The notes below the pieces were generated by a model, which ran no database searches, had not been told where the DNA came from, and saw nothing but the letters and a program-made list of their open reading frames with translations. Both the position numbers and the translations under genes were made by a program. 64,000 bases of DNA. It comes from Fimbriosthenelais zetlandica. Its lineage: Eukaryota. Shown piece after piece: positions 25,080 to 61,385 of this stretch. Position 1 is the stretch's first letter. Every line of letters starts with the position of its first letter. The DNA is taken from the NCBI GenBank assembly GCA_977030845.1, contig OZ365111.1, positions 49,662,001-49,726,000 of the forward strand, in the 5' to 3' direction.

Positions 25080-25247
25080 NNNNNNNNNNNNNNNNNNNNN
25101 NNNNNNNNNNNNNNNNNNNNNNNNNNNNNNNNNNNNNNNNNNNNNNNNNNNNNNNNNNNNNNNNNNNNNNNNNNNNNNNNNNNNNNNNNNNNNNNNNNNN
25201 NNNNNNNNNNNNNNNNNNNNNNNNNNNNNNNNNNNNNNNNNNNNNNN
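25080..25247. other. Assembly gap (168 N)
   Basis: Run of N directly visible. Confidence 1.
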
Positions 25248-29055: not shown

Positions 29056-32000
29056 ATGGTGGAGGATGAAATGGAAAGCGACAAGATGTGTCAGCGAGAA
29101 AGGAACAAAGAAAAGAGGAGAATTATGAAGAATATACTGCTATTGGGAGTTGTAATACACCTGTTGTGTGTCGCTTTGAGGGTAAGAATTTTTTTCTAAA
29201 CCACTTGATTCTCAATGAAATTAAAGTTGACTTGGTAACATGCGGTCAATCTTCAACATCAACTCTGATTGCGTGTGTAGAAGCGAATATCATGTTACTA
29301 GAATTACAAAATAATTTGAAAAAATTGCATTGGATTATTATTACAGTCAGGTTATATTATTATTCTGTATTTTCTTTCATATTAATCCATAAGTAGAGCA
29401 TGTTATAGAATACCATAGATCATATTAATATAATACAAAAAAACAAGTACGTGTACATGTACACCCCCTTGGCAGTTTCATTAACATACGAAAAGCATTA
29501 TTGTATGCTACACAGAGTTTCTCAAGAGAACAATTCCACCACAGCTGCGACATGTATTGAGATGAAAAGTAGGTCTGGAAGTAGATCTCCACCGCCTCAG
29601 AACACATATTGAATTTACGGCAAGAATAATTCCCCTGCATTGGCATGCAGATGTCTGCACTGCCTCATAATATCTTTATCATCTCTCATGTCTTTGCCTA
29701 TATAAAGTGACCAAGATACTTGACAGAAGCATCCTCCCCACAACCGGGCATCTTTCCTCCGTCTGACGTGTGTGTAGCATCTGGACCTGCTAGAGGAGGA
29801 TGGACAGAAGGGACTTCCTGCAAACTTTCACCTCCTATTCGGAAAGGGGAGAATGTAGTATTTGTTATGTACATGTTACGACAGATCACAATGGCACTTA
29901 TAATTGATGTCTTGATCAAGCCCATAACTTTCACAAGTTCCCAAAACCTTGAATAGTTCTGTTACAGATGGACAAAACACGACAAGGTCATATGCATACA
30001 TCAAATGGTTATTCGTTCTATCACCAGATAAGCATCCAGCTTGACACCTGGGCATTATTCAAATCGTCCTTATATACATTAAATAGGTGCGGGGAGATTA
30101 TCCCCCTTGCCTTACATCATTTGTTACTCTGAATTTGGTTTGAAATGGTTCCAGACCACATAATGTCCAATTGACAGGATTTTACTTGCTATTTCCAGAT
30201 ACCCTACAGACTCCAGAGTAGTATTAACAGAGAGAAGGGAATAGGAGTGATCACTGTGGGACTAAACTACGGTGTCTCCGTGCTATCATGTTTATTTATA
30301 ACGAAAGTTTTCACGTCAAAAGTTGGTCATAGAAAAAGTTTTCTCACAGTGGCTTTTACCCTCGGTAGCTGGATACTGGCTAACGGATATGCTGGTATGT
30401 AACTTATGGTCCTTCATTTCTTTAGGGTTAAACTGGCACTTAAATCAATCTTGTCCATGTACACAAAGTCAAAAGTGCCATTTTTAGTACATCACTGCGT
30501 TGTCACATGTCAGCTGACTTCCTGCATTTTTGCCAGCCAATGCCCATCCAAGAATCTGGGTCAAACTAACATAGATTGACCCAAAGATATGATCAATTCA
30601 GAATCATGAGGATCATTCAATGTTTTCCTATCTTCTTCAGTGTGGGCCACTATGATTCCAGCAGCCGTTTTGTTAGGTTTGGCTACAGGTTTTATATGGG
30701 TTTCACAGGGTTCTTACAGCACCCTCTCAGCCGTGAGATATGCTGAACTCACAGACACCCCTGTCAAAGCTATACTTTTCATGTTCTTTGGGATTGGCTA
30801 TGCTTTTAAAACGTCAAGTAAGTTGGCATTTTAAATAAGTTCCAATAGCTTAATGATCAAAGTGTGAAGGCACAAAATCACTGGTATCACAATGCAAAGG
30901 ACTTGCAACTCAAATTGGGGGGGGGGTTTCAGATTCTAAATGTATAATTTGTATACGAATTATTTTATGCATTGAGAATTTTCCTATGGAATTATATATA
31001 TTGTTCCTATATCTGATTTTCCTGCTCAAAATTATTCTTTACCTAATGCAGGTAATCTCGTCAGTTCGGTTCTGTCATCAACAATACTACAAACAGTTCC
31101 TGCTAATGTTACCATAGAAACCAATGACACAGTCCTGGCGACGTGTGGTGCTAGAGACTGTCCTGGTACTAATAGATCCAACCTAAACCTGGAAAGACCA
31201 CCAAGCTATGTGGTAAGCTATACCTCAAACAGGAGGCCCAAACATTCAAGCTTTAAAATAACTGCACGAAATGCATTGATTTCATTGAGTAATCCATTGT
31301 CAGATACAGTCAGAATAAAAGGTACAAAATACTGTCCAGAGAGTTCAGCCTTTGCCTTAGTGCAACTGTTAGTAAGCAAAAGTAACCAAATAATAACTCA
31401 AATCTGCCCAACCTGTTAGGGATTTTTAGCAGATGGGTATGTCTGTACTTCAGAAATCTTGAAAAACATTGGTCAGATTCAGTGAAAAAAAAACATTGTG
31501 CATACAAGTTCAAGTACCAAACTTCTTGGTTTGAAGGGAGTTAAGCCAGAGAGGGAGAGAGACAGTTTCTAACGAATGTTTGAGCCTGGGAGGGAGTTTT
31601 AATTCTACTTTCAGATCTGGATTTTGCTTGGTGTTAGTGTCGGACTTTGTGTCATAGCTGCATGTATAACTATGTTCCTAATGGACGATGCACCCAAAAA
31701 CCCCAAAGCTGATAAAGAGAAAGAGGATTGGAAGAATGTGTTTACATCGACTATTAAACTTTATCGATATAAAGAAGCCTGGTTGCTACTGCCCATGGCA
31801 TTTTATCAGGGAATGCAACCGTCTTTCTTTTCATCAGAATTTGGCAAGGTATGTCAACTTAAGTTTTACATGTGATTCAAAGCATTTAATTTGCAATCCT
31901 ATACATATTACTGACATTACACACTGCTGGTAAAATCACAACTAGGATTTTAAAATTGTATCTATTCTCCAAGACATCATTTGCTGTGAATAATAATTCT

Positions 32001-34743: not shown

Positions 34744-37700
34744 ATGTTGGAGGATGAAATGGAAAGTGACAAGATGTGTCAGCGAGAAAGGAACAAAGAA
34801 AAGAGGAGAATTATGAAGAATATACTGCTATCGGGAGTTGTAATACACCTGTTGTGTGTCGCTTTTAGGGTAAGCAATATTTTATTGTTGCTAAACCAGT
34901 GGATTCTCAATGTAAGATGACTTGCTTAGTAACACCTCACATCAACTCTGCATGCGTGCATACAATGTTACTGGAATAACAAAATAAGTTGGAAAATTTG
35001 CATTGGATTATTATTACAGGTTATACAAAAAAGTGTTACACCATTTAACAAATGTACAAATACCCTAGGATAATACAGAATACACTATAGCTCTCTTTTA
35101 GTATGTATGGTACCTAATATTGAGGGTTTTAAAATGATTTTTCATTGACAAGATTTTACTTGCTATTTCCAGATACCCTACAGACTCCAGAGTACTATTA
35201 ACAGAGAGAAGGGAATAGGAGTGATCACTGTGGGACTAAACTACGGTGTCTCCGTGCTATCATGTTTATTTATAACCAAAGTCTTCACGTCGAAAGTTGG
35301 TCATAGAAAAAGTTTTCTCACAGTGGCTTTTACCCTCGGTAGCTGGATACTGGCTAACGGATATGCTGGTATGTAACTTTAGTGTTTATGGTCCTTCATT
35401 TCTTTAGGGTTAAACTGGCACTTAAATCAATCTTGTCCATGTACACAAAGTCAAAAGTGCCATTTTTAGTACATCACTGCGTTGTCACATGTCAGCTGAC
35501 TTCCTGCATTTTGGCCAGCCAATGCCCATCCAAGAATCTGGGTCAAACTAACATAGATTGACCCAAAGTGGGTCATCGCTGATTGGTAATATTGGCACCT
35601 CAACAGCAATGCATGTTCAGAACTTTTTCATCAGAAGTTGACTCTGATTTTGCACCCTAATATCCCATATTCAATTACGTTCATATCAGATACGATCAAT
35701 TCAGAATCATGAGGATCATTCAATGTTTTCCTATCTTCTTCAGTGTGGGCCACTATGATTCCAGGAGCCGTTTTGTTAGGTTTGGCTACAGGTTTTATAT
35801 GGGTTGCACAGGGATCTTACAGCACCCTCTCAGCCGTGAGATATGCTGAACTCACAGACACCCCTGTCAAAGCTATACTTTTCATGTTCTTTGGGATCGC
35901 CTATGCTTTTAGAACGTCAAGTAAGTTGGTATTTCAATAAGATGTATAGGCACGAAATCACTGGTATCACAATTCAAAGGAGTTGCGATTCGAATAGGGA
36001 ATTTTAGGATTCTAAAAATATAAACTGTACAAGAATATTTCACTTATAATTTGTATAGGAATTATTTTGTTCAATCATTTTCCATATGAAATTGCATGTA
36101 CATGTATAATAAGTTTGATCCTATATCTGATTTTCCTGCTCAAAATGATTCTACATCAAATGTAGGTAATCTCGTCAGTTCGGTTCTTTCATCAACCATA
36201 CTACAAACAGTTCCTGCTAATGTTACCATAGAAACCAATGAGACAGTCCTGGCGACATGTGGTGCTAGAGACTGTCCTGGTACTAATAAATCCAACCTAA
36301 ACCTGGAAAGACCACCAAGCTATGTGGTAAGCTATACATACCTCAAACAGGAGGCCCAAACATTCAAACCTTAAAATGTCATCGAGTAAAATTTTATTTT
36401 ACAACCAGATACTCATATATATAAAGGGACATATACAGGGATTGTTGCGGGAAAGTGTAAACGGAAAGATGAAATACTGACCATCTTGATATAGAGGACT
36501 ATCTAGATAGAGGTTACCAGAATTTGCCCAGACGTCTACTCTTGGAATTTTTAGCAGCTGGGTAAATTGTAGGCCTAGTATGTCTGCAGCTCAGAACATT
36601 GTGCATTACAGGTACCAAATTTCTAGGTTCTGCCTATAGGCAGGACGAGTTGTACCAATTCAATTAGAGAAGGCACCCTGCGATGGCAGGAAGGGCATAT
36701 AAGCATGGTATACCATGGTTGTCTGGCAGGTTAATTTGACAGTTTTGTGCTTCTCCGTTTGAGCATGGATGGAGTTTAATTCTACTTTCAGATCTGGATT
36801 TTGCTTGGTGTTAGTGTCGGACTTTGTGTCATAGCTGCATGTATATCCATGTTCCTAATGGACGATGCACCCAAAAACCCCAACGCTGATAAAGAGAAAG
36901 AGGATTGGAAGAATGTGTTTACGTCAACCATTAAACTTTACCGATACAACGAAGCTTGGTTGCTATTCCCTTTGGCTTTTTATCAGGGAATGCAACCGGC
37001 TTTCATTGCGTCGGAATTTGGCAAGGTATGTTTAAGTAAATAACATTTGTGAGAAAATCCTGGTAAAATCACTTGACTGCTTGAATGAAATTGATTATCT
37101 ATTCTTGCTCTTGATTTAAAAGATTTTCCTTTGAACAGTCCTATGTCGCATGCACTCAGGGGATCTGGATGATTGGTTATGTCCATGTCGCCTATGCTAT
37201 TGTGGGATCTGTTACATCTCTTGCCAGTGCCAAACTCCTCAAGTCTTATTCTAGCAGCCGTCTTCCTGTTATCTTCACAGGTATATTTCTCCCATTCTCT
37301 ATACTGAGAGGCATGTAAAAGGCCAGCCATGTCTGCCACTGTCTATGGTGATAGGCATGTGAAAGGCCAGCCATGTCTGCCACTGTCTATGGTGAGAGGC
37401 ATGTGAAAGGCCAGCCATGTCTGCTACTGTCTATGGTGAGATGCATGTGAAAGGCCAGCCATGTCTGCAACTGTCTATGGTGAGAGGCATGTAAAAGGCC
37501 AGCCATGTCTGCCACTGTCTATGGTGAGAGGCATGTGAAAGGCCAGCCATGTCTGCCACTGTCTATGGTGAGAGGCATGTAACAGAACCAGTGCTATATT
37601 TCGAGAAGAGCAGGGCTGTTTTTGGTATGGACAAGAGAGTACATGAACAATTTCCACTTTCAGTGATGTTGATTGATCTTGGTAGTCAACTGGCTCTTCT

Positions 37701-44665: not shown

Positions 44666-46360
44666 TCATGGTACAACATTAACGATCAGGGTCTTGGTCG
44701 TGCTTTGTGTCGGCACCCCTCTGTCCCGACACTGAATTTCTATCTCATATTTGCTCTTTTCGGCGTGTACAAGGGGAGCTGTTGTGCGGAGGTTGTAGGC
44801 ATATTTCATCCCTTTGATTAATACCAACTTGAACCCAGGTTCATTGATCTCACAGATTATTTCACCCTTTAAACCTTGGTCAGGGTCAAAAAGTGACAGA
44901 TGAGCGACCAGTACATCCGAGTTTGGGGTTTCCTTCACCTGAGCGACTGTGTTGAGAGCCAGTAGATTCAAACTGGGAGAATGGTCGTTCACATCCGTTA
45001 TATTGACCTCGATCAAAGTATCAGACTGCTTTGGGGGGTTTGCTGAATCGTTACACATAATACGGGCGCTCACTGATTTTTCAACTTCATAGTCAAAACT
45101 CTTGGCCGTGAGGATTTCATAGGAAATGAAATTTCCGTCTTGGCCACTTATTTGTTTCAGTTCAAGGTTTGGACTCTGCATAGAGCAGTTGACCTTTCCA
45201 TGGCTGACTTTATCAGTGTCGTAGACAGCAACATGTCCTACCAGAGTATTAGCAGGTTCGTTCTCGCTCACTTCCATCTGACCATTGCTACTTTGGGGGA
45301 AGGTTTGAATTATCGGGACTGCTTCATTTATATCAATGACATCAATGGTAAAGTTCTTTGACAGGCTCAGGGGAGGGTCTCCTTTGTCCGTGCAAATGAA
45401 TTCAACTTCGTATCTACTGCACTCTTCGTAATTCAGCGGTTTTATGGAGGCCAGACTGTAGTAATCAGCACCAACGTATTTCTCAACGGTGAAGTGGTTG
45501 TATGGGTCCTTGGCATGACACTCAATGCGACCAGCAATGCCAGCATCATCATCAGTCACATAGATTCTGACTGCAGTTGATCCGTAGCGAAGCTCCTCCG
45601 TGATATTGAACGGACCTGTCGGGGGCTTAATCTCGACAATCTTGGGTTTGTACTCATTTTCATCCAGGAGGTAGAGTTTAAGGGTTCGTACCGTAGACCG
45701 AGGAGTTTCCCCATGATCAGTGCAATTAATGGGTATTTTGTACATTCGCTGTTCCTCGAGGTCAAATACTTTTGTGGTTACAACCTGGTATTTATTTTGA
45801 CTCAGTTCTTCTAGGGCAAAACCTGTAGTCTTGATACTACAATTGACTTCTGCATTATGTCCTTCATCACGGTCAGCTACTAAAACCTGAGCGATAATTT
45901 GACCAGGTGGTTTATTTTCCACCATTTCAGCCATGTCATGGTACCTGGATGTACTGAGGGTAATTTGAGGGCTGTTATCATTGACATCAGTAACTATAAT
46001 GGTCAGATGGACTTCCCTTATTGGCCTTGAGCGGAGACATGAACTGAAGACCTGGATGGTAGTATTGATCATTGGTGTTACCTCACGATTAATTCCACGT
46101 CTTGTATTCATAACACCAGTCCTTGGGTTAACATAAAAGTATGATCCCAACTGTTTAAATTCGAGCTTTTCATTTTGACATCCAGGAAGACCGGTGTCAT
46201 CTAGTTTCACCATGAAGGTCCCGTGTGGTTGATTCTCTGGTAAGGTGATTGTCTGGTTGACGATCCTCGTGTCAGTACGCCGGTCAGCGGACGACAGATG
46301 GTGGGTGAGGATGAGAAGCCACGTCCAGCTAACAATTGACAGGTGTCTTACTGAAGCCAT
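44666..46360 (-). CDS. Protocadherin-like protein: signal peptide plus 5 cadherin (EC) repeats, no transmembrane segment in the ORF (564 aa)
   Basis: Acceptor (ttgtctttcAG) immediately before the ATG; hydrophobic N-terminal signal. PEN/EN, DxD, DRE-like (INRE, DLEE, NYEE, DYE) and DxNDxxP linkers (DVNDNSP, DENEYKP, DINEAVP, DVNDHSP), CxDxGxP motifs. TGA follows the fifth repeat. Confidence 0.85.
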   Translation of the reverse strand: MASVRHLSIVSWTWLLILTHHLSSADRRTDTRIVNQTITLPENQPHGTFMVKLDDTGLPGCQNEKLEFKQLGSYFYVNPRTGVMNTRRGINREVTPMINTTIQVFSSCLRSRPIREVHLTIIVTDVNDNSPQITLSTSRYHDMAEMVENKPPGQIIAQVLVADRDEGHNAEVNCSIKTTGFALEELSQNKYQVVTTKVFDLEEQRMYKIPINCTDHGETPRSTVRTLKLYLLDENEYKPKIVEIKPPTGPFNITEELRYGSTAVRIYVTDDDAGIAGRIECHAKDPYNHFTVEKYVGADYYSLASIKPLNYEECSRYEVEFICTDKGDPPLSLSKNFTIDVIDINEAVPIIQTFPQSSNGQMEVSENEPANTLVGHVAVYDTDKVSHGKVNCSMQSPNLELKQISGQDGNFISYEILTAKSFDYEVEKSVSARIMCNDSANPPKQSDTLIEVNITDVNDHSPSLNLLALNTVAQVKETPNSDVLVAHLSLFDPDQGLKGEIICEINEPGFKLVLIKGMKYAYNLRTTAPLVHAEKSKYEIEIQCRDRGVPTQSTTKTLIVNVVP

Positions 46361-48377: not shown

Positions 48378-48701
48378 GGCTATACCAAAGATACTAATAT
48401 ATATTAGTATCTTTGGCTATACTAGGCCTACCCCTTGACTAACTGGGAAGTCCTGCACATAGCAAAACCCTGTGATTTCATTTGTTTTTGTGGGGGTTTT
48501 CACTAAAAAAAACTTGTTTCATAACTTAGCACGACTAAGCTCAATTATAAAAATAAATCTCATCTCAGTTCGTTAAGGAAAACCCAGAGAAAAACGTGGC
48601 AGAAAAGGGGTAAACTTGTCCCGCCAGCCAGGCTGTGCTTCGCGGAGTAACATGGACCTTGTAGCCACCTATCGTGAGAATAGTGAAGCTTGGCTTCACC
48701 T

Positions 48702-48714
48702 GTTGCCTGGTGAC
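48702..48714 (+). promoter_or_regulatory. RFX X-box-like motif GTTGCCTGGTGAC at the putative start of the orphan gene
   Basis: One mismatch to GTTGCC-N(0-3)-RGYAAC; lies in a locally CpG-richer segment ~130 bp before the donor at 48843. Confidence 0.4.
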
Positions 48715-50138
48715 GCCAATATGGCCGCCGTGGAGGTGGCGGGTGTGCAGCTGGCTTCATTCATTACACATATTCAGTTTTTAAAGTCATTATGGAGGAG
48801 ATTTACCACTTAGAAAGTAACAGGATCTTCTACATCTTAAATGTAAGTATTTTTGCGTTTTTAAACCACATGTCATTGTTTTAAATTAGATCTGAAACCA
48901 TTTTTTCTCATGAAATTTTCATTTTTGCCTCGGCGCGTGTGACTGTCCGCCAGCACTCGACTCGGACTTGGTCTATGGTCTTGGTCAGTTACTGTACCAA
49001 GGACAAGAAATCATTGGCAAGCTTCCCCAAACCCAAAACCATGAAGGGTCCTTATATCTACAGTATTATTTTAATTTACAGTAATTTAAATTGAGGTATA
49101 ATTAGTTATCCGGTACCGGTATTAGATCTTATAATAACTTATAATACCGGGTATAGATCTATTATAACAAAATCAAAACATGAAATTCAAGCCAATCAAG
49201 GAGATTCAAAGATACAGTATTGTTATTCTCAGGACATAACCGTACTGAATTCTACATGCATGTTAGATCTATGTACTTGAAATATAAGTTCAAGATCTAG
49301 ATCTATTTTTAATCTATACGCCTCTCCTAATAAATCCTAAGTAGGCAAGCTTGCCTTGTCGAGCTCTAACATAATAACATATGGCAGAGTTCCAATGATA
49401 TAATATGTGAGCCGGTCATAAGGCCATAAGCTTCTAAGAAAAGAACAAGGCAAGTGGCATGCAAGTGCTTGAAGTGGTGAACAACAATAGAGCGTTCACA
49501 CCAGGCCGATCACGGTCCTTCAGGCGGGGGATTAGCCTTGGCTTGGGCTTGGCTTTAGGCAAATCCTCCCCCGATTGGCTTCGGCCAGTCCGAAGGACTT
49601 TATCCTTTAGAAGTTCTGCAGATCAAAATGTTACATCAATGGAGATTAGTTGCTGGACTGTTTATATGACCTATTATTTTGCCAGGTATAGATATAGAAA
49701 CGTCGAAACCTAAAGTAGGCCTTGGTCTTATAATCGAGTCCTATTACTATTAAGATCTATTAATTAATTAGGTACCGGTACTGTACTGTTACGCCTGGCC
49801 CTAGACTAGGAGGCCTAGACCTGGCTAATGTACCGTTATTAAATTAGCGAAAAAAGACAAAATTAGCGAAAAAAGTAGAAAAAATTACTTAAGAAGAAAA
49901 AGAAATAATATTATTTGAGAAAGAAAAGAAATTTATATTCGAAGGTGAAGTAAACTATTAGCCTATTCACTTAGTTTATTCTGCGTGTAGACCCAAACTT
50001 TTGTTTCTTTTTTGTTTCTTTTTGAATTAGACTAATACAATATTAAGTTTTCATCACATCACTACCATTTAAGTCATTTTTTTCCTTTCAGGATTAATTT
50101 ATTATAAGGATATTTATATCTGGGTTTAAAACGTAGCC

Positions 50139-53100
50139 ATGATGAAACAAGTGAGCCCGTCAGTGGACATGCCGCTTGTCACGTCCCCGCTCATCCACAA
50201 CGCCATGCCGTCCAGAATAGGCCCACCAAAACCCCTCATGAAAAACATGACTGGTATCTTCCTGGGAACAGTAAGTTCTACATTTTTATAAATTTTAACA
50301 TTTTGCTCGATCATCTTATAAACTCTACTGGTAGGGTTTCAAGATGGAGATAGTTTACTAAAAAAATCCTAAGGAAAAATTAAAAAAAAAAACGGGAAAA
50401 AAAATGTCTGCAAACAAGCCTAGCTGGACTGTTACAAGCCTCACCTGTGTTAACGCTTATACCCAGGAAATTTGACCTTTAATATTAATTACCATATAAT
50501 GTCCATGATGGTTATTCATATAGAAAAGAATGCGTAAGTTGTTATTTTTTTTCCATTCAAAGTTCTTAATGAATATTTCTGTGCATGGCAACGACGCCTG
50601 TTTCTGTTATCCTGTTATTAATGTGTTTTTTTGCGCTCCTTTTGCTACAATGTAAACCCTGTATATTGTACCTACTCATAAAATATAGATTAAATTTAAA
50701 ACTAAAATAATTAATAATAATATATTTATTTAAGGATGAACACAGGAATTATCCGGCGACCAAGAAGATTGTGCCCCCTCTGGCACGGGTACGTGTGCCC
50801 ACCAAACGATCACGCACCCCCACAGAGGAACGCAGATACGTATGTCAAATTATTACTTTTATATTCACAATTACCCCTCAAAATCTAAATAAATTATAAT
50901 GGTATTAAATTTTAATCAGAGACTCGGAGATTATTCCCAACCTTTAAACATAGACATAGAATTCTATGTTTATGCTTTAAAGTAACAAAAACAAAATAGA
51001 AAGTTTCGCCTCAGTGGCGGCCACTGGAAGAACAAACCGGAACTAAATTGTTCAATTCCACAGTACATGCCTACAGTACATGTATTTGTAAATGACGTAC
51101 TGCAAATTTGAAAATAGCAACTGTTATTTCTGAAAAGGTTACTTTCTATCCTAGGATTTGTTAGTATTTTCAAAAGTATATGGCTATTAAAAAAATAAAT
51201 ATTGAACTTAACTTTGCAGATTGAAGATGATAGTGATTACTGTTGGCAATTGCCAGTAAGATTGATAATTTTGGCTGTGATTTGAACATTTCATTTTGTG
51301 TTCATTTTTTGTGATATCTTCATTTTTTTACTACTTTTAATAAGGTTCATCAAAGGGATGAGCGGCTAGAATATCGACTTCTCTTTGTACAATGTAGGCC
51401 TAGTCGCAAAACAGCGAAATAATATATGTTACTGTTCAGATTTGTTTTACTTTGTTTTTCACGAGTCCATTTGGAAAGTTATTACAGTAAATTAGATACG
51501 CTTAGGCTAAGTCGTTTTGAGAAAAACAAACTGCATGGCTTACCCCATGATTTAAAAAGATTTCTTTTACCAATAATTAAATCTTACATATTATACTATC
51601 TGCACATTTCTAATATACAGTTTGTTTTACATTATTCTAGTTTTATTTCATTTCTCATGTATTCTTGTTTTATTTTATTTTCTATATATATGATCCACCG
51701 CGACCCTTCTTCCCGCATCAATATATTGACCGCTCCTCCACAACCCTTACTATTGTCACTACCCCACCCTGGCTGACCAATGACTAATTCAACACTGGAC
51801 ATTGGCTGACCATTACCTGGCCCTGACCTGTCCATCTACCACCTGTCCCTCCACATATCTCACCTGCCTCTCACCTAAACATGGTGTCATGGACCACCCA
51901 CCATCCCTACCCGCCCCTCCTTAACTCTTACCTTTTCCATTTTCATAAATTTTAAATATTATTTTGTGTGATATAAAATCAAAATTGGATGTTAAATTTT
52001 TTTGGGATGATATTTACCATCACTATTCTTTTGTCAAATGTTGAAATACTTTTGTTTGAAATACTTCGCATTTATCTGTTTAAATATTGTATAATCCTTT
52101 ACATAAAATTACATTCGTAATATTTTATTAAAATCACAATAACTATTGGCAACTTTTTCTCAACTTAAATCTATTTCATATAAATTCAAATGGGCTCATT
52201 ATGGCACTGCATATTTTATGGCCCTGTATATTTTATGGCACTGTATCCTTCATTCCCATAAAATATCAATATATTTTGTTTTCAATGATTTGTAAAACAC
52301 AGACAGATTATTCTGATGCGCTTTGTCTTCTCTATGTCTTATCTACGACTGAACCTGTGACCATACCTAACCTGCCATCCATGCCGCCATCTCGCTATCC
52401 ACTCCACACACCGCAGAAAATGGTGGAATTACTCCGCTACAAAGATGAACGTAGGGGCTTCAGTGGAAACCCTGTCAAGGTATAACATTTTTTTCCAATC
52501 GTTACTACTTTTCGTGTTTTGACAGCAAGATAAGCTCACGGGTATATTCAATACATCATACATAGCAGATCCAAACTTTATCCACACAGATATTTTAGAA
52601 CTCCTATAGTTTGTACTTGTTTCTGCACAAGATTTGAATATGATTAACAGTAAAACACACAATTATTTTTGATTTCTTTTTCAGAGGCGGACCCCTTCAG
52701 CCACTTCTGTTCTGGATGCGCCTCCGCAGAATACCGCCCCCTCACTTGTAGAAGATGAAGATGTGGCTATTTGGGATCTTTGCAGGTAAGTGTATTTTAA
52801 ATATGATTTTTATGTTCAAACTTTACTGTTCAGAATTTAATGATCAACTTGATTATGGAATGTCATGGATTCATTCAATTCCAATTTGAAGCGTAATTCA
52901 AATCTACCATATTCCTACTCCCCGATTGCTGTCACTGGGCTATCAAAAGCCAGCTATGTCTCCCACTGTCTATGGCGAGAGGCATGTAAAGGCCAGCTAT
53001 GTCTCCCACTGTCTATGGCGAGAGGCATGTAAAGGCCAGCTATGTCTCCCACTGTCTATGGCGAGAGGCATGTAAAGGCCAGCTATGTCTCCCACTGTCT

Positions 53101-56100
53101 ATGGCGAGAGGCATGTAAAGGCCAGCTATGTCTCCCACTGTCTATGGCGAGAGGCATGTAAAGGCCAGCTATGTCTCCCACTGTCTAGGGCGAGAGGCAT
53201 GTAAAGGTCAGGTATGTCTCCCAATGTCTATGACGAGACGCATGTAAAAGGCCAGCCATTTCTCCAACTTTCTATGGCGAGAGGCAAGTAAAACGCCATC
53301 CATGTCTCCCACTGTCTATGGCAAGAGGCACGTAAAAGGCCATCCATGTCTCCCACTGTCTATGGTGAAAGCCAGAGGCATGTAAAAGGCATGTAAAAGT
53401 ACCATACAGTCAGAGAGCGTAACCAGAGAGTATAGTACGAGAGTATGATCAGATTATGTTCAGAGAGACTGGGTATAGCTATAGAGAGTATGGTTAGAGA
53501 GTGTGGTCAGATTATGTTCAGAGAGACTGGGTATAGCTATAGAGAGCATGGTTAGAGAGTATGATCAGATTATGTTCAGAGAGACTGGGTATAGCTATAG
53601 AGAGCATGGTTAGAGAGTGTGGTCAGAGAGTATGGTGAGAGTACAGAGAGAGGTGTCATTAGTGCTGGTCTCCGGTTTCTCCATGATCATGTAATATGAA
53701 ACCTTACAGAAACATGATAGAGTTCATCCAGAACTGGGGTACAGGTAAACCTTGTTAAACCAGCACCTCACTAACACGACCACCCCACGGATAAAAACTC
53801 ACAGATAAAGACCGACCGCCTATCATTCAGCCAAAATTCATTTTTACACCTTGGAAAAACACTGTCAAACCTGAATATATTTGAATAAATTAAGCAAAGT
53901 TTAGCATGCCATAAAGTGGTTGAATTATAATCTGTAAGAATTCATGTATTTTCAGACAGACTCAGAGGCATTTTACTGCGGCCACCAATTCTGGTGTCAC
54001 ACATCTAGAATACCTCAATCCTGACGCTGACGGTGGTATGACGTCACATGACCGTGACGCCTTCACCGTACCTCTGTCATCAACTTTAGCGAGCGAGGTG
54101 CATCGCTTAGCCTCCCACAGACAACCTGACACAGCTCAAGGCCTCATAGACTGCTACAAGAAAGTCTGCAAGGTAATTCTTTAAATTCATTTTCTTTAAA
54201 TTGAATCTTTAAATTCAGCTTACTTCAACTTTGATCTGTCCGTACATGTAGCTACAGGATCTGTCAGAGCTGTTGGTAGCGATCGATGAATTTTCGTTTT
54301 TTTTCCCTGACATCCCATGCCCCTTTTAAGATACAAAATCCTGGGTAAGCCCCTCTTGATACATATATTTAGGGAAGATTCCATGAATATTTTGTTAAAT
54401 TCTCATCTCATTTACTTGCAGGGAAATAAAGAAGTACTACAGCACCTTCTGCCTTCAAGGTCAATGAAAGAAGGGCAAACAAAGAGTGGACAGAACTACA
54501 ACTACACCGGATTTACTGTCAAGTAAGGCTCACCTTACTTGATAAAACCCCAAAATCTCTGTATGAGACAATGATAAGTGATAGAGTCGCTTTAAGGCCT
54601 TGGGCGCATGATGTAATTTTGGTGTAATGCAGTACTTAGAGACTTTTGTCCTTGGGTTGGAATGTCTTTTTGGACCATCTCCATCTCTTCTGGGTTTGTT
54701 TAAACCTTATAAGGGGCAGATCCAATGGGGAGGTCAAGGACTCAGGACTTAGCTGTACTACCCCCTACCCCGACATTCCTTAGAGCTTTTTTTTAATATC
54801 AATGTCCCTAATCTTTCCGAAGTATCGTCATTTTCTTAAATTTATCTTCATCTTCTTCCAACTTTATGTGCCTGATTATTCTTATTATGTATCTGATTAT
54901 TCTGAGGTCTCCTTTGTGGAGAAATAATTGCATTACTGGTATTTATAAAGCTGTTCTGTTTTTATCATTACAGGAGTTATAGGAACCCTAACCAGGCTGA
55001 TATACAGGCTAACTTCTCACCTCCCCTGCCCTCTGAACCCGCCTCACGACCCCGTACCACAGCCCACCACGACCCTTCACGACCCTACATACCCAGTCCT
55101 TACTTCTTTAAAAGTTACAGCCCGCCTCAAAAACCTACCAGCGCCAACCAGAAGGGCGCCATCCACACCTCCCCCAGGCCGGCTTATGATGGTAAGTTTA
55201 TTCATATTGCAGGCAGTATAGTGTTGATGTGGGAGGCCACAGGTTCAATTCCCGAAGCTGCATCCAAATTTGACATTTTTAGTGTTGATAACTAGGTTAT
55301 AAAATGCCAGCCTGGCCATATCTCCCACAGTGGTGAAAGAAATGTAAAAGACCAGCTACGTCTCGCACTGTCTATGCTGAGAAGCATGTAAAAAGCTAGC
55401 CATGTCTCTCACTTTCTTTCTTGAGAGGCTTGTAAAAGGCTAGCCATGTCCCACACTGTCTATCGTGAGAGGCATGTGAAAAGCCAGCTATGTCCCCACT
55501 GTCTATGGTGAGAGGTATGTAAAAGGCAAGACATCATGACTTCCATTGTCTGTCCTGAGAAGCATATGAAAGGACAGATAATGTATAAGGATTGCCACGT
55601 CGATTTCCAGGGTGCAACCAGTCTTTTCCTGGGTGATGATGCACGGTGGCTAATTTGCATTGACGTCATTGCATTTAGCGGCGTTAAGGCTTACTATTAT
55701 CTACTATTGTGTCCTCAACATAACCCGCTAACCAGCCACCCAGAAAGGTCGGGTTACTCATGCTAAAATTAGCCCTTTTTGACAGATTGCTTTGGCTATT
55801 TATAATTCACCCCCGCTATATTAAAGCGGCTCTATCACTGATCTTTTCCTTGTACCTAGGCTCAGAACTCGGCATTTTATAATCCACTGAGTGATTTTAT
55901 TTTGGAAAGGATTGAAATTCTAATTGTAACTGATAGGATTGGTGCACGGCATGATGTAACTTTATATAAACCCCTGAATAGTGTTAATTGCAAATTAATT
56001 AATCTTTGAAGCTTTGGGGATCTCAGGTTTGGGATATTTGCAGTAGCCTGACTCGAATTAATGTTCATTTAAAAATAATCTAAGAAGCTTTGGGGTTATT

Positions 56101-59100
56101 TTGAGTTGGCTGACCTTAATCCCAATGTGTGTACAATGTAAAATCCATTGGGAAAACGCTCTGGAGTAGAGAGTATTGTAATTAGGCGGACTGGACTTAA
56201 TCTAAATGATAATAAGATTCTAGGCTGAGAGGGAAAATTAGGTTAGGTGTCTGATTTAGAACAAGACTTGGGGGATTGAAGCCAAAGCTAACACCTAAAA
56301 TACTGGTAATGGGTAGAGCACCCTCCCCTTACACCGTCCATATTAGATAATATTTCCATGATTCGATCAAAGTAAACTATGCTAGCTTACTGACAATGCC
56401 CATACCATACAAAGTCCTCTGGAATGCTCAGGGCATGCCGATCATGTATCGGAAGATGATTTTACTCCAGTTATGAAACCCATTCTCTCTAATTTAATAC
56501 ATTTTCTGCGCTGATTCTGGAAATGCTGAATGCCATCAAAAGTCCTTAGTGGGTCAGTGTCTTTCAATGATTCAGTCAAAGGGTTGTTGGGAATGCAATT
56601 ACTGGAGTGTGAGGAGCAAATTGAATGTTAATTTGATTAGTTTTTCCATGGTATAGTTAAATGTGAAGAGAAAATTATAGTGATTATATAGTTGTAGCGA
56701 ACCTGAGATCCGTTGCTAATTTCAATTACATGAAATCCCGACTTTAGCCCAATATGCGTTTTATCTGTTGAAAATTGGAATTGAACCAGGGACCTCTCAC
56801 ACTCAAGTCAAACACTCTATATCCCATGAGTCACGACCCCATCCGTATTGTGAGTAATTATGCTTATTTTAAACCCCCAAGTTTTTCAAAATGAAGTTTT
56901 AAGGATGTCGTGATCTGACTTAGTCAGTCCCTGATTACATATTCCTAACGAGCTGACGAAGCTGTAAAGAAACCGTAAGCTCTATGGGGGGTGTAGTCAG
57001 GTGGTTACTATGGTAACCTGATAGGTGGTAGAAAAGTGATCCGGGTTGTGAGAGTGTGCCATGTTAACACCTTCACTGAAGGAACAGATCCATGAGCATT
57101 AAGATTTCATAATGACGCACCTTGGATTTGTTTTGACGGTGCGAATTATAATGCATCACCCAGTGCTGCTAACTGGGATATAAAGGCCAGCCATGGCTCC
57201 CACTATGAGAGGCATGTTAAAGGCCAGCCATGGCTCCCACTCTAGTGACCGTCTATGGTGAGAGCATAGGCATAAAAAAGATGTCTATGGTGAGAGGCAT
57301 GTGAATGGCCAGTAATGTCTCCCACTGCCTGTGGTGAGAGCCGTGTTATAGAGAACAATTGCTACTATTCAAAAAGCAGGCCACTCGTGCTGGCCATTGG
57401 GTGCTGGATGTTAGCCAATCTTGCACCATAATCTGTATTAAATATTGAATTTTCTCACATTCTTTGAATGACGAAATACACATCAACTCAAGTGATTTTA
57501 CATTGACCTTTCAGTCAGTCTTCTTCAGGCTTGGAACTTTAGATATTTTTCTCTTAATTTTTCAGTGTATCATTGATACTTTTGATTTTTTTTTTTAAAT
57601 TTGGGTTTTGCATGTTTTTCAATTAATAACATTAATGAAAGTTCGATATATTCTCGGTCAATTTTAAACGAAATATTTGGGGTATTTCGGTTGTAATTCA
57701 GAAATAAATTCATAAGAAAATGTTTAACATTTGAGGCTTCATAGCCTTCATTTAATTGTAGCCAACACTAAATGTGTCAATTACCATATTGAGTTACAAT
57801 ATTCCCCTAGCAGCGGTATTGTGTTTGATGAAAGTTTTGTGGCTGTCAATGGTAATATTGATATTTACAGAGCCTCGTATCGGGGTAGCTCCAGGGGCCG
57901 GTGTTTTGTCACGGTCGTTAGGCAGGAGTCGTCAGGACAACTCCCCACATAACAACACCCCACTCAACATGGAGGTTCTCCATGGTAACGGTTATACGAC
58001 ACACAAGGTAAGCAATTCACTCTCAATTAATACACAAGTCATTTAAGGCCAAGGAAGGGGAAGGGGCTGGAAGAGAAGGTGAGGGAGAGAGGGAAGAAGG
58101 GGTGAAGAGTAGTAGAGGAAGCGGAGCTTAAGCCGGGACTCTACTGCTGCGATTTTGTTTGCGACAAGTCTGCGACAAAGGTGATGCTTGTGTTTCAATG
58201 ATAAATTTACCATTGGAGGACGGCCTTAAGGCCTTGGACACTTGAACCACAATTTATAAATTTTATTCTTACACAACTTCACAAGCATCACCTTTGTCGC
58301 GGTAGTGTCGCAAGCAAAATCGCAGCAGTGGAGTCCCGGCTTTACTCTCAATTAAACCATTTAATGCCAATGATGGAGAGATGTGGGAGAGAGGGGAAGG
58401 AGAGAAAGATGGGAGAGGAGGGGCGGAAGGAAAGACAGGGGAAGGAAAGACCGGACTCGAAATCGATCCGTCCTGTACCCAAACTAAACCCCGCTCCCAT
58501 GTGCACCCCCTTATATCATTCATGTAGGCTTTTTGGACCAACATTTTTTATTAGCTTATTAGCTCTCTAGTATGCTGGAACTTACCTGTAAGGTGAAATG
58601 TTGAAGTTTAATTGGTGTTATACTGAGACCTTTCCGAGAGTGGTCGAGGTGTAATAACTAACTTAATGACGTATATATGTATATGTATGTATATTAGTAA
58701 TGACGTAGGCCCTGCTCTGCCTACTTGGAATTTCTTATTAGCAACTAATTACCCGTATCTTGCAACTTGTTTATTGCTCTTGATATATTTCCTGCAAGAT
58801 TATAAGTAATATAAGTGTCCCTTTTCCTTGCTATAGACATTATCGTTTGAAGCCTCAGATCCATAGTCTTGAGTGTAATCGGTCAATATGGGACTATCAA
58901 ATTGGGCTTAGATAACAAATACATGGCCAAAATGTTGACTTAAAACTATTCTTAACTTTTCAAGGAGGTTGAGAGAATTTTCTTTTTAATTCGTAAGATT
59001 GAATTAAAAATAGGGCCTATAGTTCCTATATTCTAATAACATAAAAAAATCTAAGCCTAAAATTTTCCTGATTTTCAGCCCGTGTAGAATAAATCACCCG

Positions 59101-61385
59101 CCCCAACCCAAAGGACATCCAGATGCATGAGTGGATTCCTGGGACTTCTAAAAGCCCTTAGCATTAATATTAATCCCTCGAGAAAAAGATAAATTTATAA
59201 ACATCGAAAGGAATGATGTCAATTATGTACAACATTTATGAAAACTTTCTCAGTAAATCTCAAAATCAACTGTACCTTCGACTGAACAATGGGAATTAAC
59301 TAAAAAAAAAACTTCTATGCCATCTATAAATTTTTGCCGCGAGTATTATAATCATTCTGATATAGCTATAGGCTGTTTGTCAATCTTAGGCTGAGATTGA
59401 TTAAACACATTAATTAACCATTCTGCGCAGTTATATATAAAATAACTGGCATTGAACCTGTATTCATTGGGTGTATCTTTTAGTGCTAGGATTATAAAAC
59501 ATTTTGGCATATCCTTTCCCATTATTTTCTGACTACATGTATATTGATGTATGTATATAAGCTTATTGTATATTAAGTAAATACAATGTTTAATGTTTAA
59601 AAATTTTGTTTGGCTCATCACTTGACCCCCTTGCTGATAAGTAATATGCATAGGTTAATTATTGCAGTAAAGTAACTAGTATAAGGTTTCAACAATTATT
59701 AGGCAATTCTTGTCTTGTATAATGCCTCAGTTCAGAATCATGTTACACTACATTAATTGATAAGAAATTTAAACGAGGGTGTATTAATAGCTTCTAGAGG
59801 TAAATTCTTTTGTCGGTTTTTAAACCATATAGGGCCTAATTACAGATACTGGAGTTAAAGCCATAGAGTCCATAGAGTTTTCTGAGTGTTATTTTAACTA
59901 AATTTCATGAAGCTACCAATTCATAAATTGCATTGAAATATAATGATATCTAGCTTCCATGTCCGGAAGGGCAACTCTCAAAGGACCTCCAGGCGGAAGT
60001 ACCGATCTTAAGACAAGGCAATTGAGCGATAATGGGGCAGTGGGCGATAATAGAGGTCTCGTCCATTCAGTCGATGCTAACTAATGAGACACAACCCCAT
60101 TGATGGCATACAAACCAATGGCCTGTTATTTTTAGCACACACAGTTATTTTCTCTAGTTAGATCTATATTTAGCTAAGTTTTAATGGGGAAACCCATCAT
60201 GTATATATTAGGCGCAGGTTGAGCCGACATCTTATTGCCTGCCCTCACGGGCACACTTAAACAGATTGGTTTCCCTCGATCTGATCCGGGTAATATTGAA
60301 AGCTCCATTTAATTCAATCTTTCCAAATATATACCAATACCCGGGGTTTCCATTTTCTTATTGTGGTCATTCAAGTGTTATCATTCCTAGCTGAAATACA
60401 AGCAAAAGTATCTACCTTAATCAATTCCGATTAATTAATTTTAATTTTAATGATTATTTGTATGAAAATCTTACTATACTTGAAAGTAGTAACTGAAAAT
60501 GTGACCTCAAACTAAAAGAGCCTGAAATATGCGCGACTTTTTATATACTACTTAAAGTCTCGAAAAGAAATGCCATAAATTTATTGAGAATTTGAAATTT
60601 TACCATTTCATGGTTTAGACTATAGAAGATCACTGTACCCACAGACCTGTTAATGAGCAGACCAATTGAATGTACTAGATGTGTAGGGCCTATACCCAGA
60701 TTTGAAATCCGACTCTGTGAATTCCTATACAGTATAATACATTCTCGATCCAAATTGAAAACCCCATTTCCCACTGTGTCAGATCTAACTCCGATTAAAA
60801 ATAAAAAGTTCAAACTTGGCAAAGTTAGCTGCAGTCTTAGCAGGTGCTAAAAGATTACATTTTGCACCTCCTATTATAATATAATTGAGAAACTTCAACT
60901 CAATCTTTTCTTCTCATTATGTAATAGTCTTCTCTCATTCCCAGCTTGTCGATGGGGTTATTTATTATGTCATACCACCCCTGGATTCTTTTTTCCGCCT
61001 TTAGTGCTCCCTACCCCCTCCCCCACCACCTCCTCCCCCCAACCCCGCTGCCCCTATGCTTAACGCTCCACTTCCTAGGCCATCTCTGACGTCAATGCCC
61101 ACCTGGCGAGAAGCTAGCGCCACTAACACGACTATCGGCCAAGTCAGGAATCACATTCCTCACACTCTTCACAATGTTCCTATCTCCCATACCTTGCCAT
61201 TACCTCCTACAGCATTCAGTACTATGACAGTCGGCGTCTCGAAAAGACCACAACAAGACCTAGTGAGGGAAAAAACTGCACTCTACCCATATAAGCCTTC
61301 AAATATCTACCTACCTGGACATAAATCAAGGTGTGCTACCTATAATAACTATAGAATCAGGTGGGGATATACTTGTAACCTTTAA
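50139..61385 (+). CDS. Uncharacterised Pro/Ser-rich protein, ~522 aa, 9 coding exons
   Basis: Exons 50139-50270, 50735-50839, 52303-52479 (acceptor uncertain), 52685-52785, 53956-54172, 54422-54522, 54974-55191, 57871-58007, 61005-61385 join with junction phases 0,0,0,2,0,2,1,0 into one stop-free frame. In-frame stop just upstream of the ATG. Probable non-coding exon ending at the gtaagt donor at 48843. Confidence 0.78.
52935..53400 (+). repeat. Minisatellite family locus, ~10 units of mostly 43 bp
   Basis: Near-identical ggcatgtaaaggccagctatgtctcccactgtctatggcgaga units at 43-bp spacing from 52981, degrading 3'. Confidence 0.95.
53445..53618 (+). repeat. 58-bp tandem repeat, 3 copies
   Basis: Units start at 53445, 53503 and 53561 (atgatcagattatgttcagagagactgggtatagctatagagagYatggttagagagt). 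Confidence 0.95.
55212..55545 (+). mobile_element. tRNA-derived SINE head (B box) followed by ~5 degenerate minisatellite units
   Basis: GGTTCAATTCC B box at 55242-55252, gataactaggttataaaatgccagc leader, then repeat units. Confidence 0.65.
56785..56850 (-). mobile_element. Degenerate tRNA-derived SINE head
   Basis: Minus strand ...gagtgtgagaggtccctGGTTCAATTCCaat with a degenerate A-box region upstream. Confidence 0.45.
57003..57018. promoter_or_regulatory. Near-palindromic X-box-like motif GGTTACTATGGTAACC (intronic)
   Basis: Fits the RFX consensus GTNRCC/T-NN-RGYAAC; 16-bp palindrome with one mismatched pair. Confidence 0.4.
57160..57385 (+). mobile_element. SINE remnant with ~3-4 minisatellite units and Deu/Nin-like tail
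   Basis: cccagtgctgctaactgggatataaaggccagccatgg... ending gagaacaattgctactattcaaaaagcaggcc. Confidence 0.65.
58131..58341. mobile_element. PIF/Harbinger (Tourist-like) MITE, 211 bp
   Basis: 62-bp TIRs (58131-58192 / 58280-58341, few mismatches) flanked by TTA on both sides. Confidence 0.88.

What the first reader, a model, noticed from the sequence alone, without database searches (positions are those of the whole stretch)
50139..61385. Orphan 9-exon gene (~522 aa) largely missed by the ORF track; candidate ciliary or sperm protein
Seen: nine exons chain in phase over 11 kb into one open frame. The protein is rich in Pro/Ser/Thr/His, has a 9-proline run at the start of the last exon, no signal peptide or TM segment, and no domain I recognise. 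The more ordered stretches are EDEDVAIWDLCRQ, MTSHDRDAFTVPLSSTLASEVHRLA, GLIDCYKKVCKGNKEVLQHLL and the C-terminal LYPYKPSNIYLPGHKSRCATYNNYRIRWGY. X-box-like motifs lie at the putative promoter (48702) and in introns (~50585 half-site, 57003). Established: RFX/X-box drives ciliary genes, and many axonemal microtubule-inner proteins are low-complexity with short aromatic/Pro motifs. Inference: an undescribed cilia/flagellum-associated protein.
Basis: partly seen in the sequence, partly recalled or inferred. Interest (0 to 1): 0.7.

Follow-up and report, generated by a model that had tools for sequence, protein, structure and literature searches.

The report
Conserved unnamed gene, not an orphan
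The stretch holds a real, single-copy gene for a mostly floppy protein that oysters, snails, lamp shells, ribbon worms, another bristle worm and a sea star also carry.

Summary

**Exons confirmed.** The exon at 53956-54172 alone finds 12 proteins (E down to 1.8e-17). Full-length relatives come from Owenia, Lingula, about 30 molluscs, Lineus and Asterias. All are annotated "uncharacterized" and none has a Pfam domain. Homology, codon usage and splice sites support these exons:
- 50139-50270
- 50735-50839
- 52417-52479, with a long form starting at 52303
- 52685-52785
- 53956-54172
- 54422-54522
- 54974-55191
- 57871-58007

**Last exon not supported.** It lies inside intron 8.

**True 3' end.** The end of the gene lies 4-7 kb beyond the window. 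A small exon and three exons there encode the family's conserved acidic and coiled-coil C-terminus. The resulting 12-exon, 551-aa model has the same 11 intron phases as the Owenia gene.

**Protein and function.**
- AlphaFold2 predicts mostly disorder, with a basic N-terminal part carrying short conserved motifs and a long C-terminal helix.
- The family matches no solved structure, and it is not TEX33, lophotrochin or trochin.
- X-box evidence is weak and not significant.
- No RNA run could be listed, so the ciliary reading remains speculation.

The parts
48616..48842 (+). Putative non-coding first exon and promoter region (inferred, no RNA evidence)
   Evidence: GC 0.52, single copy. Donors at 48742 and 48842 score 7.7 and 7.8 bits. 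An upstream exon is required, because the ATG exon has a 14.8-bit acceptor at 50092 and an in-frame TAA before the ATG. The oyster orthologue has a non-coding exon 1 about 2.7 kb upstream of its ATG exon.
48702..48714 (.). X-box-like site GTTGCCTGGTGAC (1-nt spacer), followed by a CRE-like GACGCCA
   Evidence: Perfect match to GTNRCC-N-RGYAAC on the minus strand. It lies 1437 nt before the ATG. Function is untested, and its similarity to the oyster exon-1 site is not above chance.
50092..50270 (+). Exon with the start codon (ATG at 50139); encodes the NMTGIFLG motif
   Evidence: Acceptor 14.8 bits, donor 6.5 bits. tblastn to Owenia, Lingula, Pecten and Asterias. Codon score 0.26 per codon.
50735..50839 (+). 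Coding exon 2 (PPLAR...RTPTEERRY), 105 nt, phase 0/0
   Evidence: HMM E 2.6e-8, profile E 3.7e-5. Same length (105 nt) and phases as Owenia exon 2. Splice scores are weak at 2.8 and 2.8 bits.
52303..52416 (+).
   Evidence: In frame. Similar to the extra segment of Owenia isoform P0004 and of Asterias P0028. Acceptor is weak at 1.4 bits and the codon score is -0.03.
52417..52479 (+). Coding exon 3 (KMVELLRYKDERRGF...), 63 nt
   Evidence: Same 63-nt length and phases as Owenia and Pecten exon 3. tblastn. Profile E 0.0066.
52685..52785 (+). Coding exon 4 (variable, ...EDEDVAIWDLC)
   Evidence: Acceptor 9.7 bits, donor 12.7 bits. Phase 0 to 2 as in Owenia and Pecten. Codon score 0.21.
53956..54172 (+). 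Coding exon 5, the best conserved exon (RHFTAATNSGVTHLEYL ... GLIDCYKKVCK)
   Evidence: phmmer against 1.84 billion proteins gave 12 hits, best E 1.8e-17. Profile E 2.9e-13. No second copy in the genome.
54422..54522 (+). Coding exon 6 (GNKEVLQHLLP ... YTGFTV)
   Evidence: Acceptor 10.5 bits, donor 8.3 bits. tblastn. HMM E 7.6e-5.
54974..55191 (+). Coding exon 7 (SYRNPNQADI ... PYFF ...)
   Evidence: Acceptor 10.9 bits, donor 9.8 bits. Profile E 5.5e-11. tblastn E down to 3e-12.
57004..57017 (.). Palindromic X-box-like site GTTACTATGGTAAC inside intron 7
   Evidence: 0 mismatches, in single-copy DNA. Function untested.
57871..58007 (+). Coding exon 8 (APGAGVLSRSL motif)
   Evidence: Donor 11.1 bits. 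The motif matches Pecten, Crassostrea, Aplysia, Lineus and Asterias. HMM E 0.0022. Ends in phase 0 like Owenia exon 8.
61005..61385 (+). It lies in intron 8 of the homology-supported model and is unsupported.
   Evidence: No homologue in a search limited to proteins of 69-220 aa, and no match to any family member. Codon score 0.016 per codon. Single copy. The nearest AATAAA/ATTAAA is 665 nt after the stop. It could at most be an in-frame cassette (61005-61142 or 61005-61262, phase 0/0).

Best explanation
**What is there.** The stretch is the 5' two-thirds of a real, single-copy protein-coding gene on the + strand. The best model has 12 coding exons and 551 aa. It runs from the ATG at window 50139 to a stop at G000:C11:49732743, which is 6.7 kb past the window end.

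**Exons outside the window:**
- G000:C11:49730142-49730244
- 49731790-49731990
- 49732221-49732318
- 49732564-49732743

An untranslated exon probably lies near 48.6-48.8 kb.

**Family.** It is the orthologue of an unnamed protein family with no Pfam model. The family is found in annelids (Owenia), molluscs, brachiopods (Lingula), nemerteans (Lineus) and a sea star (Asterias).

**Shown.**
- Gene structure.
- Orthology.
- The protein is predicted to be largely disordered.
- A basic N-terminal 330 residues (pI 9.8) carries a string of short conserved motifs: NMTGIYLG, PPLARGRG, RTPxExRRY-KMVExLR, NPRNFT..GVT, GLEECYKKVCKGN, TGFTVRSYRNPNQAEI, PYFF, APGAGxLSR.
- An acidic C-terminal part carries a GLExExG..VEID hairpin, a conserved RKxSI site and a helix of about 45 residues.

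**Inferred, not shown.** It most likely acts as an elongated adaptor. The C-terminal coiled coil would pair two chains. The basic motif string would dock along a partner surface such as a cytoskeletal filament, possibly microtubules of cilia or flagella. The RKxS site looks like a basophilic kinase target. I put the ciliary or flagellar version of this at about 0.2.
For: **Homologues and orthology.**
- Exon 5 alone finds 12 proteins. Full-length homologues are listed, and species names are given.
- tblastn maps seven exons to homologues in order.
- A family HMM finds the three C-terminal exons only downstream of the window.
- A whole-genome profile search finds seven collinear exon matches, all at C11:49712720-49732674, and nothing elsewhere in 447 Mb.
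- Model A is an open 551-aa frame. It aligns nearly end to end with Pecten (E 4e-71), and with Owenia at 45.5% identity over 290 aa (E 5e-73).
- The intron phases 0,0,0,2,0,2,1,0,1,1,0 are identical to those of the 12-exon Owenia gene.
- 14 of 15 invariant and 38 of 46 near-invariant family residues are kept.

**Coding signal.** Codon log-odds were trained on three unrelated genes of the window, whose identity Pfam confirms. They put 11 of the 12 exons above the 95th percentile of open segments.

**Transcription in relatives.** Homologues are transcribed and spliced in other species: intron-free contigs of about 3 kb occur in RNA-derived Logan assemblies.

**Protein features.** AlphaFold2 with 24 sequences gives mean pLDDT 51, with helices at 71-89, 170-207 and 486-533.
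Against: - No RNA or DNA run of this organism could be listed, so no junction is confirmed by reads.
- Exon 9 (ext 68142-68244) rests only on splice strength (14.1 and 11.1 bits), phase and the parallel with Owenia. Its codon score is 0.06.
- Splice scores of exons 2 and 3 are weak.
- The functional part is inference from composition and architecture only. No Pfam, PDB or Atlas match gives a handle.
Confidence: 0.85

Rival explanations
1. One reading: an orphan nine-exon gene of 522 aa ending at 61385, encoding a new cilia or flagellum protein driven by RFX through X-boxes.
For: - The 522-aa frame is open, and eight of its exons are real.
- X-box-consensus sites lie at 48702 and 57004, the only two perfect ones in 64 kb.
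- The oyster orthologue has an X-box-like site (1 mismatch) plus a perfect CRE in its transcribed exon 1.
- Owenia has a 1-mismatch site 2351 nt before its ATG.
- The exon at 61005 has usable splice sites (7.9-bit acceptor) and could serve as a phase-0/0 cassette.
Against: - It is not an orphan.
- The last exon has no homologue and weak codon bias. Nearly all isoforms of relatives keep the conserved C-terminus, which is encoded beyond the window.
- The Owenia gene has the same exon count and phases as the model without this exon.
- X-box-like sites are not enriched near the ATG in Owenia, Lingula or Pecten.
- The promoter similarity between the window and the oyster is at chance level: 16-17% of shuffles or control segments score as high.
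- The family profile matches no chain in the PDB at a significant E-value.
Confidence: 0.12
2. A nuclear or cell-cycle regulator rather than a cytoskeletal protein: a disordered basic protein with RGRG and TP sites and a geminin-like C-terminal coiled coil.
For: - The family profile's third-best PDB match is the geminin coiled coil (2zxx, E 0.38, 41 residues).
- The N-terminal part is basic, with a conserved RGRG and RTPxE.
Against: - E 0.38 over a short coiled coil is not significant.
- Nothing outside the helix resembles geminin.
- No Pfam geminin hit.
Confidence: 0.08
3. A chance chain of short open frames, or a dead gene.
For: Candidate exons with moderate splice scores are common throughout the window, and no reads were available.
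Against: - Significant, collinear homology exists for ten exons.
- The 551-aa frame is intact.
- Conserved residues are kept.
- Intron phases are conserved.
- Codon bias is strong.
Confidence: 0.02

Closest known systems
Unnamed family of 'uncharacterized protein' entries: Owenia fusiformis CAH1793278 (557 aa), Lingula anatina LOC106167179, Crassostrea gigas LOC105340345, C. virginica LOC111129131, Pecten maximus LOC117323419, Aplysia californica LOC101859859, Lineus longissimus LOC135485455, an Asterias amurensis entry
   Same: - Same order of conserved motifs from N- to C-terminus.
- Similar length (551 aa against 476-616 aa).
- Same 12-exon structure and intron phases as Owenia.
- 45% identity to Owenia over the N-terminal 290 aa.
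   Different: - The variable middle region is not alignable.
- Small substitutions occur in motifs: Y to F in NMTGIYLG, and G to V in RGRG.
- No member has a described function.
Axonemal microtubule inner proteins such as CIMIP4/TEX33 (PF15400)
   Same: Both are disordered, with short aromatic and Pro motifs. The top Atlas feature hit was a CIMIP4 cluster.
   Different: - The Atlas score of 0.76 is below the tool's noise level.
- A second Atlas query gave nothing.
- No PF15400 hit at E <= 10 in 12 members.
- No significant PDB chain match (best E 0.11).
Lophotrochin and trochin, spiralian ciliary-band genes (PMC7441323)
   Same: Both kinds are conserved across spiralian phyla and uncharacterised. 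That paper shows that such genes can be ciliary-band specific.
   Different: - Lophotrochin carries DUF4476, and this family has no Pfam hit.
- Trochin is 173-216 aa with an unrelated sequence.
- None of the family motifs occurs in the supplementary files held for that paper, which include its list of 37 oyster proteins.
- This family also occurs in a sea star.

Membership tests
Unnamed LOC106167179 / LOC105340345-like family | Significant full-length sequence similarity to members | tested here: met
   blastp of the 551-aa model gave Owenia E 5e-73, Pecten 4e-71, Lingula 6e-70, Lineus 5e-55 and Asterias 2e-24.
Unnamed LOC106167179 / LOC105340345-like family | Invariant and near-invariant residues of the 24-sequence alignment | tested here: met
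   14 of 15 invariant and 38 of 46 near-invariant residues are kept. Three of the misses are an alignment gap at the APGAG motif, which is present.
Unnamed LOC106167179 / LOC105340345-like family | Conserved C-terminal module (GLExExG..VEID, RKxSI, coiled coil) | tested here: met
   HMM hits at E 5.4e-6, 0.014 and 3.1e-7 on three in-phase exons at ext 69790-70743, outside the window.
Unnamed LOC106167179 / LOC105340345-like family | Shared intron positions and phases | tested here: met
   Phases 0,0,0,2,0,2,1,0,1,1,0 in both the window model and Owenia. Pecten shares the first seven.
Solved axonemal or other proteins in the PDB | Sequence similarity of the family profile to any solved chain | tested here: not met
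   Best E 0.11, to a designed protein; nothing axonemal at E <= 10.
TEX33 / CIMIP4 (PF15400) | Match to the Pfam model | tested here: not met
   No hit at E <= 10 in 12 members or E <= 1 in 4 members. The Atlas score of 0.76 is a non-significant lead.
RFX-regulated ciliary genes | Conserved X-box close to the transcription start | tested here: inconclusive
   - There is a consensus site at 48702, but the start of transcription is unknown.
- The oyster has a 1-mismatch site in exon 1.
- Lingula and Pecten have none within -6 to +1.5 kb of the ATG.
- The inter-species similarity is at chance level.
RFX-regulated ciliary genes | Expression in ciliated cells or testis | not testable with these tools
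   No run was listed for this organism. Paper searches for gene and run identifiers found nothing.
Lophotrochin / trochin | DUF4476 plus the lophotrochin motif, or the trochin sequence | tested here: not met
   No Pfam hit. The family motifs are absent from the supplementary files held for that paper, and its printed alignments show unrelated sequences.

The most novel reading that the evidence does not exclude
The family is an ancient bilaterian ciliary or flagellar microtubule-associated protein. It would be kept in spiralians and echinoderms and lost or unrecognisable in vertebrates and ecdysozoans. Its basic motif string would lie along axonemal microtubules, its C-terminal coiled coil would dimerise, and it would be switched on by RFX, perhaps together with a CRE-binding factor, through a site in or next to the first exon.
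Probability: 0.18. Interest if true: 0.5.

Novelty: new member of a known kind. Interest (0 to 1): 0.3.

Why it matters
For annotation, it gives a corrected 12-exon model of a gene that a simple ORF track misses. It also shows that a window edge cut off the true 3' end.

For biology, it flags a well-conserved, Pfam-less, largely disordered protein family present in at least five animal phyla with no described function. Such families are common, so the surprise is modest. Any functional result in an oyster or Owenia would transfer to the whole family.

Tried and rejected
**Searches that gave nothing.**
- The look-up of sequencing runs on 10 kb (kind any) and on 1.2 kb (kind rna) listed no run. 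Read laying could therefore not be used.
- Pfam on single exons and on homologues found no family.
- The look-up of encoding contigs for the closest fragment, P0001, returned no DNA because the file is too large. Aplysia was too long, and Lineus and one Crassostrea isoform are not on record.
- Two ESM Atlas calls gave no usable hit.
- The PDB profile search gave nothing significant.
- Paper searches for six LOC identifiers and four SRR identifiers found no papers. The oyster larval single-cell atlas supplement has no hit.
- The family is not lophotrochin or trochin.

**Ideas tested and dropped.**
- I considered a conserved X-box plus CRE composite shared by the annelid and the oyster. The 17-mer was derived from the two sites, and the local alignment of the two regions is at chance level.

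**Not run.**
- Fold search was not run, because the model is low-confidence (mean pLDDT 51) and its matches would be meaningless.
- The spliced window protein was analysed only inside scripts. It has no reference, so the remote searches used single exons or the Owenia orthologue instead.


Full report
**Setting**

The window is G000:C11:49662001-49726000 of a 447-Mb animal genome. It is AT-rich (GC about 0.38). Three intronless ORFs elsewhere in the window are confirmed genes:
- an Srw/rhodopsin-type GPCR at 20809-22080 (-)
- a tektin at 25981-27492 (+), Pfam E 9e-142
- a five-cadherin-repeat protein at 44666-46360 (-)

I used these three as an independent training set for codon usage.

**The observation**

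Listing AG/GT sites around the open segments and scoring them with a generic splice matrix gave four consecutive + strand exons with strong sites that chain in phase: 52685-52785, 53956-54172, 54422-54522 and 54974-55191.

It is 522 aa, 13.6% Pro, and ends ...RIRWGYTCNL. So the chain exists as described.

**Is it a gene?**

- Codon log-odds per codon in the model frame are 0.13-0.31 for all exons but two. Open segments elsewhere in the window have mean -0.14, 95th percentile 0.095 and 99th percentile 0.206.
- GC peaks sit on the exons.
- The decisive result is homology. The 72 residues of exon 53956-54172, searched with phmmer against 1.84 billion proteins, gave 12 hits (E 1.8e-17 to 8e-5). 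Two of them are full-length proteins of 556 and 590 aa.
- These are Owenia fusiformis CAH1793278/79 and Lingula anatina LOC106167179.
- Searches with Lingula and with a 12-sequence profile found about 35 more, all named "uncharacterized" or "hypothetical". They are bivalves and gastropods (Pecten, Pinctada, Crassostrea, Ostrea, Saccostrea, Mya, Mercenaria, Ruditapes, Aplysia, Haliotis, Patella, Lymnaea, Physella, Gigantopelta and others), the nemertean Lineus longissimus and the sea star Asterias amurensis.
Only the variable exon 52685-52785 gives no separate hit.

The gene is therefore real and is not an orphan.

**The 3' end**

- None of the homologues matches 61005-61385, and that exon finds nothing on its own.
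- All family members share a C-terminal module (alignment A1): I/VxxGLExExG...VEID, then an RKxSI site, then a coiled coil (...EFEKLLxEH.E.VQEI).
- I fetched the 10 kb downstream of the window (L011). An HMM of that module hits three + strand open segments there and nowhere in the window.
- With splice sites these become exons ext 69790-69990, 70221-70318 and 70564-70743 (stop). "Ext" numbering means window plus L011, equivalent to G000:C11:49731790-49732743. They chain in phase.
- The exon ending at 58007 leaves phase 0, and the 69790 exon needs one nucleotide from the previous exon. At least one linking exon is therefore required.
- An enumeration of candidates gives a single outstanding one: ext 68142-68244, with acceptor 14.1 bits, donor 11.1 bits and phase 0 to 1.
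- The resulting 12-exon model is an open 551-aa frame. It aligns nearly end to end with the family.

**Comparison with Owenia**

- I mapped the Owenia protein exactly onto its 91-kb gene (L012). It has 12 coding exons with phases 0,0,0,2,0,2,1,0,1,1,0.
- The window model has the same number of exons and the same phases. Exons 2 and 3 have identical lengths (105 and 63 nt).
- Pecten shares the first seven phases.
- A whole-genome six-frame search with the 24-sequence profile finds seven collinear matches. All lie at C11:49712720-49732674, with none elsewhere. The gene is single copy and extends past the window.

- It lies inside intron 8 (58008-68141).
- It is unique DNA.
- Its codon score is 0.016 per codon over 126 codons, and 0.083 over the first 86.
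- It has no nearby polyadenylation signal.
- The isoforms of relatives that I looked at nearly all keep the conserved C-terminus.
- It could be spliced in as a phase-0/0 cassette (61005-61142 or 61005-61262), but nothing supports that.
The extra segment resembles one in Owenia isoform P0004 and in Asterias.

**5' end**

- The ATG exon has the strongest acceptor of the region (50092, 14.8 bits), 47 nt before the ATG. An in-frame TAA lies between them, so an upstream non-coding exon must exist.
- In Crassostrea virginica, an oyster mRNA contig from a Logan assembly maps with a non-coding exon 1 about 2.7 kb upstream of the ATG exon.
- In the window, a unique GC-rich patch at 48616-48842 with donors at 48742 and 48842 is the obvious candidate. 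This is inference.

**What the protein looks like**

- No Pfam family matches, and no PDB chain matches the family profile (best E 0.11).
- AlphaFold2 on the Owenia protein with 24 aligned sequences gives mean pLDDT 51. Its confident parts are helices at 71-89, 170-207 and 486-533 plus a small hairpin at the GLExExG..VEID motif. The rest is disordered.
- The window protein has a basic N-terminal 330 residues (pI 9.8, 28% P+S+T) and an acidic C-terminal 120 residues (pI 5.1).
- It keeps 14 of 15 invariant and 38 of 46 near-invariant family positions.
- The picture is a string of short conserved linear motifs in a basic, disordered chain, ending in an acidic patch, a conserved basophilic-kinase-type site (RKxS) and a coiled coil.
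- From general knowledge of such architectures, I infer an elongated adaptor that dimerises through its tail and docks through its motifs, most plausibly on a cytoskeletal polymer. No tool result shows this.

**The ciliary claim**

For:
- The two perfect matches to the degenerate X-box consensus in the 64 kb are at 48702 (putative exon 1 or promoter) and 57004 (intron 7).
- The oyster's transcribed exon 1 carries GTTGCTAGCTGAC followed by a perfect CRE.
- Owenia has a 1-mismatch site at -2351.

Against, or neutral:
- About 0.7 perfect sites are expected by chance in the window. This is my own estimate from information content.
- Lingula and Pecten have none within -6 to +1.5 kb of the ATG.
- The best local alignment between the window's and the oyster's exon-1 regions scores no better than 16-17% of shuffles or control segments.
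- The Atlas lead to CIMIP4/TEX33 scores 0.76, where shuffled proteins often reach 0.8. It was not reproduced.
- The family is not lophotrochin or trochin, the known spiralian ciliary-band genes, and is not among that paper's 37 candidates (PMC7441323).
- No RNA run could be listed, and identifiers of orthologues and of the runs with their mRNA contigs appear in no searchable paper.

I leave the ciliary or flagellar reading at roughly 0.2.

**Verdict**

This is a real gene and a new member of an existing but unnamed and unstudied family. The ninth is wrong, and so are the "orphan" label and the C-terminal motif. The function is open. Interest is modest.

Noticed in passing
window 25981-27492 (+): Intronless 503-aa tektin ORF (Pfam Tektin E 9e-142). 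A masked N run lies just upstream at 25080-25247.
   Followed up: partly
window-wide; e.g. 28489, 29226, 31108, 36222, 39590, 57004: X-box-like sites (GTNRCCNNRGYAAC, up to 1 mismatch) number 12 against 4.3 expected, and only 1 of 100 shuffles reaches 12. Several sit among + strand exon candidates at 28-40 kb.
   Followed up: no
window 30199-30817 and 35173-35920 (+): Two sets of candidate exons have identical lengths and splice scores, which suggests a tandem duplication of a + strand gene about 5 kb apart.
   Followed up: no
window 52945-53365, 53425-53627, 55342-55565: Minisatellites with 43/44-bp and 58-bp units lie inside introns 4 and 7 of the gene. By eye, the sequence just after the exon-7 donor (about 55205-55260) looks like a tRNA-derived SINE head. 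The same unit family seems to occur at 32.4-32.8 kb and 37.0-37.3 kb.
   Followed up: no
window 52303-52416: The in-frame upstream extension of coding exon 3 resembles an extra segment in Owenia isoform P0004 and in the Asterias protein. This hints at an old alternative acceptor.
   Followed up: partly
L019:7184-7259 (Crassostrea virginica) and L015:4-78: The non-coding exon 1 of the oyster orthologue is 92% identical between two oysters, higher than most of its coding exons (74-94%). It contains a perfect CRE (TGACGTCA) next to an X-box-like half site.
   Followed up: partly
L012:12915-18315 (-) (Owenia): A fibrinogen-C-domain gene is nested on the opposite strand inside an intron of the Owenia orthologue.
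   Followed up: no
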